Assembly: GCF_963921235.1 (NCBI RefSeq)
Contig: NC_086108.1
Coordinates: 74,462,001 to 74,526,000, forward strand
Direction of reading: 5' to 3'
DNA: 64,000 nt
Source of the DNA: Mobula hypostoma
Taxonomy: Eukaryota
This document shows, piece after piece, positions 10,227-55,212 of the stretch (positions are counted from its first letter, which is position 1; each line of letters begins with the position of its first letter). The position numbers and the translations under genes are program-made. The notes beneath the pieces were generated by a model. It saw only the letters and a program-made list of their open reading frames with translations. It had not been told where the DNA came from and ran no database searches.

Positions 10227-13200
10227 CCTATATACTAATAAAACTCTCATGCTGTCTGTCTGTGACCTCCAATTAGTGCAAACGGTGCATTACAGTAGCA
10301 CTTGATTTGGCTAAATCAAATTAAAATGCGCTAACTTACAGAATGCAGGCAAAGTTCAGGGTTATATATTTGTATAAAATTGCTCATTCGCCAAAATCAA
10401 CAGGCTCCCTCTTAACCCGCAAGCTGATCCACCATCATGGAAATCGAGACGCGACAGCCCGACGCATGCGCACAGCCAGCCTCAGCAGCGACACCTACCG
10501 GAGCAAAAGGGCAGGGCATCTCTATTTTGAAGGGTCACATTCTGCTAATCACCATCAGCATGTGCAGGATTGGGGCAGATCTAACTGCCACCCATCAATA
10601 ACAGATAATTAAATCTTATTGTAATGACGTATTTCAAGACACGCATAAAACCCTTTGCTGCAGTCAAAGGACAACGGTGACTATATCACGTCTATTTAGG
10701 AGAGCGCCAACCACATCAAGAATAGAGAATAACTGTCTCAACTTCACCACACCTTGTTCCCATTCCAACCTCACTCCTTCCGAACGCTCTGCTCTCCACT
10801 CCCTCTGCAATAATCCTAACCTATTTAACCTACCGATAAGTGGGGTGCTGTTGTAGTCTGGCGTACTGACCTCTACTTTGCCAAGGCACAGCGATAACTC
10901 GCTGATACCTCCTCTTATTTACCCCTTGATCATGACCCCACTAAGGAGCACCAGGTCATTGTCTCACACACCATCACCAATTTTATACACTCAGAGGATC
11001 TCCCACCACTGCTACCAACCATATCGTTCCCACATCTCGCACTTCCCACTTCTACCTCCTACCCAAGATCCACAAACCTGCCTGTCCAGGTAGACTCATT
11101 GTCTCAGCTTGCTCCTGCCCCACCGAACTCATTTCTGCATATCTCGACACTGTTTTATCCCCCCTGGTTCAATCCCGTTCTACCTATGTTCGTGACACTT
11201 CTCACGCTCTGAATTTTTTTTTGATGATTTTAAGTTCCCTGGCCCCCACAGCTTTATCTTTATTTTCACTATGGATATCCAGTCCCTATATACTTCCATC
11301 CCCCACCAGGAAGGTCCCAAAGCTCTCCACTTCTTTTTGGATTCCAGACCTTACCAGTTCCCCTCTACCACCACTCTGCTCCGTCTAGCAGAATTAGTCC
11401 TCACTCTTAATAATTTCTCCTTTGGCTCCTCCCACTTCCTCCAAACTAAAGGTGTAGTCATGGGCACCCATATGGGTCCCAGCTATGCCTGCCTTTTTGT
11501 TGGCTTTGTAGAACAATCCATGTTCCAAGTCTATACGGTTATCTGTCCCCCATTTTTCCTCCACTACATTGACGACTGCATTGGTGCTGCTTCCTGCATG
11601 CATGCTGAGCTCATTGACTTCATTAACTTTGCCTCCAGCTTTCACCCTGCCCTCAAATTTACCTAGTCCATTTCCGACACATCCCTCCCCTTTTTTGATC
11701 TTTCTGTCTCTATCTCTTGAGACAGCTTATCTACTGATGTCTACTATAAGCCTACAGATTCTCACAGCTACCTGGACTATTCCTCTTCTCAACTTGTCTC
11801 TTGCAAAAATGCCATCCCCCTCTCGCAATTCCTCCGTCTCTGCCGCATCTGCTCTCAGGATGAGGCTTTTCATTCCAGGACGAAGGAGATATTCTTTTTT
11901 GAAAGAAAGGGGCTTCCCTTCCTCCACCATGAACTCTGCTCTCAAACGCATCTCTCCAATTTCACGCACATCCGCTCTCACCCCATCCTCCACTAGCAAT
12001 AGGGTTCCCCTTGTCCTCACCTACCACCCCACCAGCCTCCGGGTCCAACATATAATGCTCTGTAACTTCCGCCACCTCCAACGGGATCCCACCACTAAGC
12101 ACATCTCCCTCCACCCCCGCTTTCCGCAGAGATTGCTCCCTACACGACTCCCTTGTCCAATCATCCCCCTCATTCCTTCCCACCGATCTCCCTCCCGGCA
12201 CTTATCCTTGTAAGCGGAACAAGTGCTACACATGCCCTTACACTTCCTCCCTCACCACCATTCAGGGCCCCAGACAGTCCTTCCAAGTGAGACGACACTT
12301 CACCTATGAGTCAGCTGGGGTGATTTTCTGTGTCCGGTGCTCCCGACGTCGCCTTCTATATATTGGCAAGACCCGACACAGGCTGGGAGACGGTTACGCT
12401 GAACACCTACGCTCTGTCCGCCAGAGAAAGCAGGATCTTCCCGTGGCCACACATTTTAATTCCACGTCCCATTCCCATTCTGATATGTCTATCCTTGGCC
12501 TCCCTCCTCTATTGTCAAGATGAAGCCACATTCAGGTCAGAAGAACAACACCTTATTTTCCGTCTGGGTAGCCTCCAACCTGATGGCATGAATATTGACT
12601 TCTCTAACTTTGGTTAATGCCCCACCTCCCCTTCGTACCCCATCCGTGATTTTTCTCTCTCTCTCTCCCGGCCCCCCTTCTCCCTCTGTCCCTCTCACTA
12701 CACTCCTTGCCCATCCTCTGGGCTTTCCCCTTCCTTTCTCCCTAGGCCTCCCATCCCATGATCCTCTCATATCCTTTTTGCCGATCAACTTTCCAGCTCT
12801 TAGCTCCATCCTTCCCCCTCACGTCTTCTCCTATCATTTCGGATCACCCCTCCCCCTCTCAAATCTCTTACTATCTCTTCTTTCAGTTAGTCCTGGCAAA
12901 GGGTCGCGGCCTGAAACGTCAACTATATCTCTTCCTATAGATGCTGCCTGGCCTGCTGCATTCACCAGCAATTTTTATGTGTGTTGCTTGAAATTCCAGC
13001 ATCTGCAGATTTCCTTGTGTTTGCGTTTCAAGAATAATCAGCATCCTTTGGTGTTATTGCTTCGTATCTTCTATTCAGCATTAGGGTAAAAAAAAATGGT
13101 CAGCCTAATTATGCTGTGTGGAAAGGGAAGGGGGACATTATGGTCAAGAGATGATGCCAAACGTCATCAGGAAGTGGCAAGAAGGAGAGAACAAGAATCG

Positions 13201-52128: not shown

Positions 52129-52655
52129 TTTTAAAACAATATTTTTATTGAAATATATATATATGGAGCGAGAATTGGAGGAGCAAATTTGTAAGGAGAT
52201 ATCAGTAGTAGGCACAAGGTTGTGATTGTGGGAGATTTTAATTTTCCACACATAGACTGGGAAGCCCATACTGTAAAAGGGCTGGATGGTTTGGAGTTTG
52301 TAAAATGTGTGCAAGATAGTTTTTTGCAGCAATACGTAGAGGTACCAATGAGAGAAGGGGCAGTGTTGGATCTCCTGTTAGGGAATGAGATAGGTCAGGT
52401 GACAGAGGTTTGTGTTGGGGAGCACTTCGGGTCCAGTGATCTCAATGCTATTAGTTTCAATATAGTTATGGAGAGGGATAGATCTGGACTCAGGGTTGAG
52501 ATTTCTGATTGGAGAAAAGTTAACTTTGAGGAGATGTGAAAGGATTTAGAAGGAGTGGATTAGGACAGTTTGTTTTATGGGAAGGATGTAATAGAGAAAT
52601 GGAGATCATTTGAAGGTGAAATTTTGAGAGTACAGAATCTTTATGTTCCTGTTAG

Positions 52656-54652
52656 TTTTTTTTAATATAGTTTTTATTGAGTTTTCAAAGTGATACATGA
52701 GAAAAAAATACCTCCCCTCCTCTCCCCCCTCTCCTTAACCCTCCCACCCCGATATATACTCCCACCCAAAAAGAAAAGAAAAAAAGAGGAACCGCCTGAA
52801 TATTGGAAGGTTTGCACATGCTCCATGGGATAAAAATAAATTTAATACGGATTTGTTACTTTCCCCCAAGGAACCAAGATCTTCATCATCGGAGCTATAA
52901 ATAAGTGCTCCAAATATTCAAAAATGTTACATATTTATCTCTTAAAATCTAAAACATTACTTAGCTTCTCAACTCTCATAGTTCCCTGGGGAATCTCTGA
53001 ACTTCACCATGTTGCTATGTGTTTCCCTCCCAATCATCCAGGCAAAAAGAAAAAAAAGATAGATAAGATACAAAAAAAGAAAAAACAAAATACCCCCCCG
53101 ACTACTGTTGTGAATGAAAAGATACACAACACTACCCCCCTCCATTGTGCGAGTCGTGGCTGTTTCCACGCTTGCACACATGAATAACGTAGCGATTGGT
53201 CAGTATTTCTTCCAGCTCCCCGTAACAAAAAATTATATATATATAGAAAAAAATTAATATTATTCCCAGCTAATATTCCTCAAATTTTAACCTTTCTTCT
53301 CCTCCCTCATATAATTAATAATGTATTTATATATTCATCCGCCTAAAAATTCAACAGGCCTAATCCTTGATCCAGTCTTCATCTTCAATCCATCTCGCTT
53401 CCTTAAGTTTGTTCTTGTATCTAGTGAATATTCAAAGAATCTCGCACAAACTCTTCCGCTTTCCGGTAATCGTCAAAAAATCTTTTTTCTCCACCAGGCA
53501 AAAAAATCTTCAAGGTTGCAGGATAACGCAATATAAATTGATAACCATGATCCCATAGGGCTTTTTTCACTGGATTAAACTTCTTCCTTCTTTTCAAAAG
53601 TTCGTAACTTATGTCAGGGTAGAAAAGAATTTTCTTCCCTTCTATCATCAGTGGCCCTTTTCTCTTCTTGGCAGCTTGGGCAGCCGCCTGTAGAATCCTT
53701 TCTTTGTCTTGAAATCTTAAGAATTTTATTAAAATTGATCATGGATATTGGTCATCTTGTGGTTTTGGTCTTAGAGCTCTATGTACCCGCTCAATTTCAA
53801 TTGATTGGTCTTCCTCTTTCATTTGCAAGGTTTTCGGGATCCATCTTTGAAAAAATTCTATTGGATTATCTCTCTCTATACCTTCTTTAAGACCAACAAT
53901 TTTAATGTTATTATGTCTACTAAAATTTTCCAACACGTCCACTTTCTCCAAGAGTCGATTTCTTTCAGTTTTCCAGATAAGCACATTATTTTCTGTTTTT
54001 TCCACTCTATCGTTAATATGCTCCATTGTTCTTTCCATCTTCTGAAGTTTCTTATCCATTTTATCCTGTCTTTTCATAGCTTTATCATAGCACATCTTTG
54101 CGTCTCTAAGCTCTGTTCTTAATTTTCTTAGTTCAGCCGTTAATTGCAATAAAGCCTCTCTTACGTCTCCATCGTCTCCTTTACTTCTGTCTCTTCCAGT
54201 TCTTCCTCCTCTTCTTCATCTGTATTCTCTGCGATATCCAATTCTGACTCTGAGTCACTTTCAGTTGCAGTGGCCGTCGGTTCTTGTAGTTTAGATTGTG
54301 TCGATTTGCGCATGCGTAATTCCGGCATCATCTTCCAAGAGACCGCTGCTGCCGCCATTGCTCCCCATTCTTCTACGCCAGAGATAAAATGCGTCTCCTC
54401 TGAAGGAGATCCAACCTGAATCCGAGGCTCCATCGCTGCAGTAGGCCCTTTTTTCTTCCCATCTCGCGGCGACTTCACAACAATAGACTTCTGCTGTTGT
54501 GGTTTACGAGGCATATCGTAGAGTAGTCTTCGAAGTTTATAAGTAGTTTTTGGAAAGTATTTATTAACTTTGTTTAAACGGTACTTTGCTGATTTTTTAC
54601 GGGAGAGCTGGATTTACACATTTCAATCCTACGTCATCACGTGATGCCCCCC
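52656..54652 (-). mobile_element. ORF1-only L1 derivative (half-L1/HAL1-like), 1997 bp
   Basis: Perfect 13-bp TSD ATGTTCCTGTTAG (52643-52655, 54653-54665). 5' end GGGGGGCATCACGTGATGACG. ORF1 54514-53421 (LENFSRHNNIKIVGLKEGIE, IEIERVHR, FYPDIS) with one frameshift and one stop. AATAAA and A tail. Confidence 0.9.
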
Positions 54653-55212
54653 ATGTTCCTGTTAGGTTGAAAGGAAAGGTTAAAAGTTTGAGAGAGCCAT
54701 GGTTTTCAAGGGATATTGGAAACTTGGTTCGGGAAAAAAGAGAGATCTACAATAAATATAGACAGCATGGAGTAAATGAGGTGCTTGAGGAATATGAAGA
54801 ATGTAAAAAGAATCTTAAGAAAGAAATTAGGAAAGCTAAAAGAAGATATGAGGTTGTTTTGGCAAGTAAGGTGAAAATAAATCCCAAGAGTTTCTACCGT
54901 TATATAAATAGCAAAAGGATAAAGGATAAAATTGATCCCTTAGAGAATCAGAGTGGACGGCTATGTGTGGAGCCAGAAGAGATGGGGGAGATTCTTAACA
55001 ATTTCTTTTTTTCGGTATTCACTAAGGAGAAGGATATTGAATTGTGTAAGTTAAGGGAAGTTATGGAAACTATGACGATTAAAGAAGTAGTATTACTGGA
55101 GCTTTTAAGGAATATAAAAGTGGCTAAGTCTCCGGGTCCTGACAGGATATTCCCTAGGACATTGAGGGAAGTTAGTGTGGAAATAGCAGGGGCTCTGACA
55201 GAAATACTTCAA

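What the first reader, a model, noticed from the sequence alone, without database searches (positions are those of the whole stretch)
52656..54652. Intact-ended ORF1-only L1 (half-L1/HAL1-like) with ORF2 almost entirely deleted
Seen: a 1997-bp minus-strand element bounded by a perfect 13-bp TSD. It has a distinct 5' end (G run plus palindrome CATCACGTGATG, 54635-54646), a near-complete L1 ORF1 (one frameshift, one TGA), a spacer, and poly(A). There is no endonuclease or RT. At ~52945 the sequence ..AGTAATGTTTTAGATT runs straight into TTAAGAGATAAA.. = LRDKYVTFLNIWSTYL* (52945-52895), which resembles the last 16 codons of a fish-type L1 ORF2. Known: ORF1-only HAL1 elements, mobilised in trans by L1, are described from mammals. 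Inference: either a non-autonomous half-L1 family in this lineage that keeps ORF1p and borrows ORF2p, or a one-off ~3.7-kb deletion, possibly at TTAAG microhomology.
Basis: partly seen in the sequence, partly recalled or inferred. Interest (0 to 1): 0.75.

Follow-up and report, generated by a model that had tools for sequence, protein, structure and literature searches.

The report
ORF1-only half-L1 family in ray
This 2-kb insert is a dead copy of a jumping-gene family in devil rays that lost its copying-enzyme gene, kept its first gene, and spread by borrowing the enzyme from complete L1 elements; it is a ray counterpart of the mammalian "half-L1" (HAL1).

Summary
A 1997-bp minus-strand element (52656-54652) sits between perfect 13-bp target-site duplications. 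It has the complete L1 5' end, ORF1, the inter-ORF spacer, 16 ORF2-tail codons, a 3' UTR, AATAAA and a short A-tail.

A second copy in Mobula hypostoma (L001) is 92.7% identical over the whole length and has the identical junction. It has its own 16-bp duplication and unrelated flanks. A contig from another labelled organism bridges the junction at repeat-level depth. The scan also holds two other unchecked notes of ~2.04-2.05-kb half-L1s in this genome.

Full-length ray L1s (L002, L003) show what was lost: 3.6-3.7 kb, from 22 nt upstream of the ORF2 ATG to just before the tail. Microhomology is 1 nt and there is no GT..AG, so the TTAAG idea and splicing are not supported.

This copy has three private defects, not two: a 1-nt deletion, a TGA and a premature TAG. 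The two copies share no defect, so their source probably had an open ORF1. I found no sign of selection on ORF1.

Verdict: an independently arisen HAL1-like non-autonomous L1 family in a ray. It is a new member of a known kind and of moderate interest.

The parts
54653..54665 (-). 5' target-site duplication CTAACAGGAACAT
   Evidence: Exact 13-mer, present only twice in the window. Contigs of the empty host repeat skip 2010 nt with a 13-nt overlap.
54515..54652 (-). Complete L1 5' end and 5' UTR (138 nt): G-run, then palindrome CATCACGTGATG (54635-54646), which holds an E-box (CACGTG) next to TGACGT. Probable internal promoter (inferred).
   Evidence: Starts at the same base and with the same motif as full-length L1s L002 (GGGGCGTCACGTGATGACGTGGG) and L003 (GGGGGGATGTCACGTGATGACGTAGG), each directly after its own TSD.
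53403..54514 (-). L1 ORF1 (N-terminal region, coiled coil, RRM, CTD), dead in this copy. Defects: 1-nt deletion at 54186/54187, TGA at 53741-53739, premature TAG at 53423-53421. Family stop is TAA at 53405-53403.
   Evidence: Frames. The three pieces are 63%, 79% and 86% identical to intact ORF1p P0002. P0002 hits human L1 ORF1p 2YKP at 6e-12 and passes Pfam Tnp_22_dsRBD. Nearly all contig depth reads G at 53741 and all reads G at 53423 on the + strand, giving CGA and CAG; some contigs carry an extra base at 54186-54189.
52946..53402 (-). Inter-ORF spacer of the parental L1, kept up to 22 nt before the ORF2 ATG. It includes a T-rich stretch and part of the short upstream ORF that in full-length L1 ends on the ORF2 start.
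   Evidence: Aligns to L002 up to 11565 and to L003 up to 11523, and homology stops exactly at ...TTTTAGATT. In L002 the next bases are GGAGTAACTTTGTTAAGAATAATGACTAAT, with the ORF2 ATG at 11588. Eight contigs of run X1 show the same continuation as loose ends at 52946.
52945..52946 (-). Deletion junction that defines the family. 3595 bp (L002) or 3706 bp (L003) of ORF2 are missing. 1-nt (T) microhomology, no GT..AG.
   Evidence: Identical junction in L001. Bridged by X9 record 11, 52910-53014, depth 31.4.
52895..52945 (-). ORF2 tail: 16 codons LRDKYVTFLNIWSTYL plus TAG. Not expected to be translated.
   Evidence: Matches LRDKYVTFFNIWRPYL in L002 and LRDKYETFLKIWSPYL in L003 at the ORF2 C-terminus. 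An X9 loose end gives upstream EKITYN in frame. In the L001 copy the short upstream ORF's frame crosses the junction in a different frame and stops 3 codons later, read directly.
52664..52894 (-). 3' UTR with a G-rich polypurine tract (about 52711-52767) and AATAAA (52678-52673)
   Evidence: 88.5% identical to the L001 copy but only 69% to L002.
52656..52663 (-). Short A-tail (8 A)
52643..52655 (-). 3' target-site duplication CTAACAGGAACAT
52222..52539 (+). Endonuclease part of the host CR1-like LINE that the half-L1 interrupted (context only, not part of the element)
   Evidence: Pfam Exo_endo_phos_2, E 1.5e-4. Host repeat depth is about 10-20 times that of the element.

Best explanation
The element is one decayed copy of a multi-copy, non-autonomous 'half-L1' family of devil rays. 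Shown: an L1 of the local ray lineage lost about 3.6 kb, from 22 nt upstream of the ORF2 start codon to 16 codons before an in-frame stop. What remains is the 5' UTR, ORF1, the inter-ORF spacer, an ORF2 stub, the 3' UTR and the polyadenylation signal. Inferred: RNA from such a roughly 2-kb source copy is transcribed from the retained 5' end and polyadenylated. It probably translates ORF1p, which coats its own RNA. It is then reverse-transcribed into new sites by ORF2p supplied in trans by full-length L1s, through target-primed reverse transcription. That leaves full-length copies with A-tails and 13-16-bp target-site duplications. The copy in this window landed inside a CR1-like LINE. It later acquired a 1-nt deletion and two C-to-T nonsense changes, so it is now inert.
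For: Anatomy and exact boundaries.

Same junction at an independent locus. L001 is 92.7% identical over element positions 2-1997 with identical junction letters. It has its own 16-bp TSD AAGATGTGTTCCAACT and an A-tail, and its flanks are unrelated.

Repeat-level presence. About 40% of the element's 31-mers are held by low-coverage runs of organisms A and B, and 17-29% by runs of only 44-134 Mb of organisms C and D. All 30 depth bins are covered in X1 and X9, with no 3' excess and no dip at the junction. X9 record 11 bridges the junction at depth 31, similar to the ORF1 contigs at 31-47.

Parental architecture. Full-length L1s L002 and L003 have the same 5' terminus, ORF1, spacer and ORF2 (RVT_1; APE endonuclease; 1e-96 to human ORF2p). 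Contigs carrying the undeleted form on each side of the breakpoint exist in X1 and X9, so an ORF2 donor with near-identical ends is present.

State of the source copy. The defects of W (this window's copy) and M (the L001 copy) lie at different sites. W's two nonsense codons are absent from nearly all family contig depth, and an extra base at its 1-nt deletion is seen in some contigs. The common source of W and M therefore probably had an open ORF1.

Earlier notes. Two further half-L1s of 2037 and 2050 letters with other TSDs were noted in the same genome. These are leads only and were not checked.
Against: Only two complete copies were available as sequence. L001 may come from the same genome as the window, so a cross-species spread rests on coded run labels and short contigs. 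Copy number cannot be read from summed contig depth. Trans-mobilisation by ORF2p is inferred, not shown, and no RNA evidence was obtained. ORF1 changes specific to W or M fit neutral decay: 17 synonymous against 15.7 expected, z 0.4. Nothing therefore shows that ORF1p is needed. The target site (AC|CTAACA) is not a typical TT|AAAA L1 endonuclease site. The nearest full-length L1 in hand (L002) is only 84-87% identical in the 5' part and 69% in the 3' UTR, so the direct parent was not recovered.
Confidence: 0.85

Rival explanations
1. Recurrent origin. Each half-L1 copy was made afresh from full-length L1 RNA by the same aberrant event, such as an RT template jump or non-canonical RNA processing between the similar motifs TTAGATT and TTATAATT. 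On this reading there is no self-propagating ORF1-only source lineage.
For: The breakpoints sit in two imperfectly similar short motifs. Parental-type contigs that match at 90% or better right up to the breakpoint exist on both sides. The W- and M-specific changes look neutral, so no long independent half-L1 history is demonstrated.
Against: Only 1 nt of true microhomology and no GT..AG, GC..AG or AT..AC. In X9 the one listed junction-bridging contig has a depth close to that of ORF1 contigs, and only 8 (X1) and 1 (X9) parental loose-end contigs are listed at the junction, with 344 loose-end rows not shown. That is not what a rare by-product would give. The 3' UTR shared by W and M differs strongly from L002. 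The 3' region shows no depth excess of the kind that 5'-truncated full-length L1s sharing this tail would produce.
Confidence: 0.1
2. A private, one-off internal deletion of a single L1 copy at this locus, arising after or during insertion.
For: No other copy lies in the 64-kb window. Internal deletions of single L1 copies are common (general knowledge).
Against: The same junction occurs at a second locus with a different TSD. A contig bridges the junction at repeat depth in a 110-Mb run. Two further notes of similar elements exist in the same genome.
Confidence: 0.02
3. A host gene derived from L1 ORF1 (L1TD1-like domestication), not a mobile element.
For: NCBI annotates the L001 copy's ORF1 fragment as 'uncharacterized protein LOC134343551'.
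Against: Both copies carry nonsense or frameshift defects. Both have TSDs, A-tails and complete L1 termini, and the sequence is multi-copy. This copy lies antisense inside another LINE.
Confidence: 0.01

Closest known systems
HAL1 (half-L1) families of mammals (Smit 1999; Bao & Jurka 2010, as cited in PMC5753468, PMC5786205, PMC13756887)
   Same: Both are L1-derived, encode only ORF1p, lack the endonuclease and RT, and are non-autonomous dispersed copies presumed to use L1 ORF2p in trans. HAL1s are already known to have arisen independently several times.
   Different: The host is a cartilaginous fish, whereas the held literature describes HAL1 only in mammals. This family comes from a different, ray-specific L1 lineage. 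The deletion is an almost exact excision of ORF2 that keeps the whole inter-ORF spacer and an ORF2 stub. It is therefore an analogue of independent origin, not a member of the mammalian HAL1 lineages.
ORF1-present 'bipartite non-autonomous LINEs' (HeT-A from Jockey, Ag-Sponge from CR1; Kojima 2018, PMC5786205)
   Same: The same design: 5' and 3' parts of an autonomous LINE joined by an internal deletion, with the ORF1 protein retained.
   Different: Those derive from other LINE clades in insects. This one is from the L1 clade in a vertebrate.
Spliced integrated retrotransposed L1 elements (SpIREs) and other internally deleted L1 copies (recalled from general knowledge, not checked here)
   Same: L1 copies with an internal segment missing, flanked by normal L1 hallmarks.
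   Different: The junction has no splice-site dinucleotides. The deleted form here is itself a multi-copy family.
Full-length L1 of Mobula hypostoma (L002) and Hypanus sabinus (L003)
   Same: Same 5' terminal motif, ORF1 (79-86% amino-acid identity to P0002 in the structured part), inter-ORF spacer, ORF2 tail, and G-rich 3' UTR with AATAAA.
   Different: They carry a roughly 3.6-3.7-kb ORF2, and their ORF2 runs 7 codons further. L002's 3' UTR is only 69% identical to this element's.

Membership tests
L1 clade of LINEs (derivative of) | ORF1p of the coiled-coil, RRM and CTD type (Transposase_22 / Tnp_22_dsRBD) | tested here: met
   W's pieces are 79-86% identical to P0002 in the structured part. 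P0002 scores Tnp_22_dsRBD 22.4 bits against a cut-off of 22.2, and hits human L1 ORF1p 2YKP at 5.9e-12. W's own C-terminal piece alone is sub-threshold at 18.8 bits.
L1 clade of LINEs (derivative of) | The parental element has an ORF2 with an APE-type endonuclease and an L1-type RT | tested here: met
   The L002 ORF2 piece hits human L1 ORF2p (8UW3) at 1.2e-96 and RVT_1 at 2.7e-30. The L003 ORF2 N-terminus hits Exo_endo_phos at 4.6e-15.
L1 clade of LINEs (derivative of) | TPRT hallmarks: TSD, A-tail, polyadenylation signal | tested here: met
   13-bp TSD, AATAAA and an 8-A tail here. 16-bp TSD in L001. 12-14-bp TSDs on L002 and L003.
HAL1-type (ORF1-only, non-autonomous L1 derivative) | Contains ORF1 but no endonuclease or RT coding sequence | tested here: met
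   There is no ORF2 apart from a 16-codon stub. 3595-3706 bp are missing relative to L002 and L003.
HAL1-type (ORF1-only, non-autonomous L1 derivative) | The deleted form is itself a repeated, retrotransposed family: same junction, different insertion sites | tested here: met
   Two sequenced loci share the junction and have different TSDs. A contig bridges the junction at repeat depth. The true copy number was not measured.
HAL1-type (ORF1-only, non-autonomous L1 derivative) | ORF1 open in the source copies and maintained by selection | tested here: inconclusive
   W and M share no defect, and W's two nonsense codons are absent from the bulk of family contigs. The W- and M-specific changes are neutral: 17 synonymous against 15.7 expected. 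No intact half-L1 copy was seen.
HAL1-type (ORF1-only, non-autonomous L1 derivative) | Mobilised in trans by L1 ORF2p | not testable with these tools
   Inferred from the lack of ORF2 together with TPRT hallmarks and the presence of full-length L1s that share the ends.
Mammalian HAL1 lineages (Repbase HAL1, HAL1b and others) | Descent from mammalian L1 lineages, with a mammalian host | tested here: not met
   The host is a devil ray (P0001 and L001 are from Mobula hypostoma; earlier notes). The parent is a ray L1 (L002, L003). It works like HAL1 but arose independently.
Spliced L1 (SpIRE-like) | Deleted segment bounded by canonical splice dinucleotides | tested here: not met
   The parental sequence at the breakpoints reads ATT|GGAGTAAC ... 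CTTATAA|TTTAAG. With the 1-nt ambiguity no GT..AG, GC..AG or AT..AC can be placed.

The most novel reading that the evidence does not exclude
A long-lived, self-propagating ORF1-only L1 parasite lineage in batoid fishes. It would be the first HAL1 analogue outside mammals. Its ORF1p would be kept open by selection, and at least in some species it would rival or outnumber its autonomous L1 partner. That would make it a natural system for asking whether ORF1p made in cis helps an RNA capture ORF2p in trans.
Probability: 0.3. Interest if true: 0.55.

Novelty: new member of a known kind. Interest (0 to 1): 0.4.

Why it matters
ORF1-only L1 derivatives (HAL1) are described in the held literature only from mammals, where they arose several times. 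A ray family with the same design shows that this route to parasitising L1 is open wherever active two-ORF L1s exist, including cartilaginous fishes. The almost exact removal of ORF2, with promoter, ORF1, spacer and 3' end all kept, marks out what an L1 RNA may need to be copied in trans. There is also a practical point for annotation. Public annotations of Mobula hypostoma already name such ORF1s as host proteins: LOC134343551 and 'transcriptional adapter 1 isoform X1'. This family should therefore be added to repeat libraries for elasmobranch genomes. It does not change the current understanding of L1 biology.

Tried and rejected
- BLASTN of the element against the window found no other copy or fragment.
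- Pfam on this copy's broken ORF1 pieces gave only coiled-coil noise and a sub-threshold Tnp_22_dsRBD hit. Identity had to be settled through intact relatives.
- The word-based protein search with the 105-aa C-terminal piece found nothing. With P0001 it found only 5 proteins, so more copies could not be collected that way.
- An exact 30-nt junction probe against JGI metagenome contigs gave 0 hits.
- The raw-read runs X19 and X20 do not hold the organism (0 reads), so there is no read-level copy number and no ratio of junction to parental reads.
- Nei-Gojobori dN/dS between the two copies was 0.48 and looked like constraint. I rejected this after matching the expectation to mutation type and CpG context: 45 of 50 changes are transitions and 18 are at CpG, and the result was neutral.
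- The splice-site and TTAAG-microhomology explanations of the junction were rejected.
- L004 and L005, other ORF1 hits, are not half-L1s. L004 is too short to reach the junction.
- The large representative protein search was not used, because the protein's identity was no longer open.

Full report
**1. The observation**

On the minus strand, 52656-54652 is a 1997-bp insertion flanked by the 13-mer CTAACAGGAACAT at 54653-54665 and 52643-52655. Those are the only two occurrences in the window.

The insertion interrupts a plus-strand CR1-like LINE, whose endonuclease part lies at 52222-52539. Short repeat contigs of that host LINE from two public runs pass straight through the site. They skip 2010 nt, which is 1997 plus 13, and 13 letters fit either side. 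These are paralogous empty sites, and they fix the boundaries to the base.

Inside the element, in element sense:
- A G-run and the palindrome CATCACGTGATG (54635-54646).
- A 138-nt leader.
- ORF1 from the ATG at 54514.
- A 457-nt spacer.
- LRDKYVTFLNIWSTYL* at 52945-52895.
- A G-rich 3' UTR, AATAAA (52678-52673) and eight A's.
- No endonuclease or RT.

**2. What it derives from**

The middle ORF1 piece found one close protein, P0001 from Mobula hypostoma (91% identity). P0001 in turn found P0002, an intact 367-aa ORF1p of the same species, and P0004 from Hypanus sabinus. Their loci were fetched as L001, L002 and L003.

L002 and L003 are full-length L1s with their own TSDs. They share the 5' terminus GGGG..TCACGTGATGACGT and have ORF1, a spacer and a roughly 3.6-kb ORF2. 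Supporting hits:
- P0002 passes Pfam Tnp_22_dsRBD and hits human L1 ORF1p at 6e-12.
- The L002 ORF2 piece hits RVT_1 and human L1 ORF2p at 1e-96.
- The L003 ORF2 N-terminus is an APE-type endonuclease.

The window element aligns to L002 9859-11565 with positions 3-1707 (84%) and to L002 15155-15471 with positions 1701-1996 (69%). The pattern is the same on L003. Between 3595 bp (L002) and 3706 bp (L003) are therefore missing.

The 5' breakpoint lies right after ...TTTTAGATT. In L002 the next letters are GGAGTAACTTTGTTAAGAATAATGACTAAT, so the ORF2 ATG lies 22 nt downstream of the breakpoint. The 3' breakpoint keeps TTTAAGAGATAAA..., which is LRDKYV... of ORF2. L002 reads ...EKITYNLRDKYVTFFNIWRPYLQKIGWHI* and L003 reads ...EKITYNLRDKYETFLKIWSPYLLKTGLNL*.

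In these relatives, however, the retained codons are residues -23 to -8 rather than the very last 16.

True microhomology at the junction is one T, within two loosely similar motifs (TTAGATT and TTATAATT). No splice dinucleotides can be placed there.

**3. Family or one-off**

L001 9858-11885 aligns to element positions 2-1997 in one block at 92.7% identity, and the junction letters are identical. It is flanked by a different 16-bp TSD (AAGATGTGTTCCAACT) and an A-tail. Its flanks show no similarity to those in the window.

Public runs add independent support:
- Low-coverage runs of two organism labels hold about 40% of the element's 31-mers. Runs of only 44-134 Mb from two further labels hold 17-29%. 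Such small data sets can yield contigs only from repeats.
- A share of 0.4 is about what 3% private divergence predicts (0.97^31 = 0.39). This is inference. It suggests that the runs hold the family's common sequence rather than this particular locus.
- Laying contigs of X1 and X9 covers all 30 bins, with no dip at the junction and no 3' excess.
- X9 record 11 (107 nt, depth 31.4) bridges the junction with 36 and 69 nt on either side. Its depth is similar to the ORF1 contigs of the same run, at 31-47.
- Loose ends at 52946 show the undeleted parental form on each side. Eight X1 contigs continue into the ORF2 start, and one X9 contig comes out of ORF2 in frame as EKITYN. An autonomous L1 with near-identical ends therefore coexists with the family.

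The scan's index also lists two other first-reader notes of complete half-L1s in this genome, of 2050 and 2037 letters, one with a 14-bp TSD. I could not inspect them and count them only as leads. One of them may be the L001 copy, if the window itself comes from M. hypostoma. Earlier notes call the genome a devil ray.

**4. State of ORF1**

This copy (W) has three private defects:
- A missing G at 54186/54187. Some contigs carry an extra base there.
- TGA at 53741-53739, where nearly all contig depth reads CGA.
- TAG at 53423-53421, where all contig depth reads CAG.

The stop position shared by both copies is six codons further on (TAA at 53405-53403 here, TAG in L001).

The L001 copy (M) is broken at other positions: codons 222 and 342 in L002 numbering. 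The two copies share no defect, so their common source probably had an open ORF1 of about 370 codons.

Segment identities between the two copies:

| Segment | W-M identity |
|---|---|
| 5' UTR | 93.5% |
| ORF1 | 95.2% |
| Inter-ORF spacer | 93.2% |
| ORF2 stub | 98% |
| 3' UTR | 88.5% |

Nei-Gojobori dN/dS between the copies is 0.48. However, 45 of the 50 polarised changes are transitions and 18 are at CpG. With an expectation matched for mutation type and CpG context, synonymous changes number 17 against 15.7 expected (z 0.4). The differences are therefore ordinary post-insertion decay, about 2.3% per copy within ORF1. Nothing here shows selection on ORF1p within the half-L1 lineage.

**5. 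Mechanism**

Shown:
- The anatomy, the exact deletion and the L1 parentage.
- TPRT hallmarks at two independent loci.
- Repeat-level abundance.
- Coexisting L1 forms that carry ORF2.

Inferred:
- Transcription from the retained 5' end. Its TCACGTGATGACGT motif is conserved from Mobula to Hypanus L1s.
- Translation of ORF1p in source copies.
- Reverse transcription by ORF2p supplied in trans.

The ORF2 stub is unlikely to be translated. In the L001 copy the short upstream ORF's frame crosses the junction in another frame and stops three codons later. I read this directly.

How the deletion arose cannot be decided. Candidates are an RT template jump or a DNA-level deletion in a source copy.

**6. 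Comparison with what is known**

Reviews describe HAL1 as an L1 derivative that encodes only ORF1p. It arose independently several times in mammals and is found throughout mammals (PMC5753468, PMC13756887). Kojima 2018 groups HAL1 with HeT-A and Ag-Sponge as ORF1-present 'bipartite non-autonomous LINEs' made by internal deletion (PMC5786205).

A full-text search for 'half-L1' and 'HAL1' found no report outside mammals in the held library. The original paper by Bao and Jurka (2010) is not held, and Repbase entries could not be checked.

The ray family meets the functional definition of a HAL1-type element. It is not a member of the mammalian lineages. It is an independent origin from a ray L1.

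**7. Verdict**

- The family reading is supported.
- The mechanism is that of a known kind of element.
- Novelty: a new member of a known kind, and probably the first noted in cartilaginous fish.
- Interest is moderate.

Noticed in passing
L001:10001-10711 and L002:10001-11104: Public annotation of Mobula hypostoma names L1 ORF1 reading frames as host proteins. LOC134343551 is the ORF1 fragment of a half-L1 copy. 'Transcriptional adapter 1 isoform X1' (P0002) is the intact ORF1p of a full-length L1 lying inside the TADA1 gene range.
   Followed up: partly
window 54627-54652; L002:9857-9885; L003:9853-9882: The L1 5' terminus G(4-6)..TCACGTGATGACGT(A/G)GG, an E-box next to a CRE-like TGACGT, is conserved between Mobula and Hypanus L1s and is kept in the half-L1. 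It is a likely core of the internal promoter.
   Followed up: partly
L002:11499-11596: In the full-length L1 a short upstream ORF (MVKFKEIPQGTMKVEKINNVLDWSNFVKNND*) ends on TAA overlapping the ORF2 start (AATAATGACTAA). In the half-L1 copy L001 this frame crosses the deletion junction and stops 3 codons later. The window copy has a private 2-nt deletion near 52993 that shifts the frame.
   Followed up: partly
window 52711-52767 (-): A G-rich polypurine tract (GGGTGGGAG..GGGGTGGGAGGG..GAGGGGGGAGAGGAGGGGAGG) lies in the L1 3' UTR and is also present in L002 and L003. It recalls the G-quadruplex-prone tract of mammalian L1 3' UTRs (resemblance recalled from memory, not tested).
   Followed up: no
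window 52300-52655 and 54666-55000 (+): The host CR1-like LINE has about 10-20 times the summed contig depth of the half-L1 in both runs laid. Many of its copies differ from this one at the same positions, so it is a very abundant family.
   Followed up: no
window 52656-54652: The best share of 31-mers held by any run is 0.41, even in the probable source organism. This is close to 0.97^31. Low-coverage runs appear to retain only the words that this copy shares with the family's common sequence.
   Followed up: partly
window 54653-54672 (-): The insertion site AC|CTAACA is not the TT|AAAA-like motif. The other three ray L1 insertions examined (TC|AAGA, TT|AACA, TC|AAGA) are closer to it.
   Followed up: no
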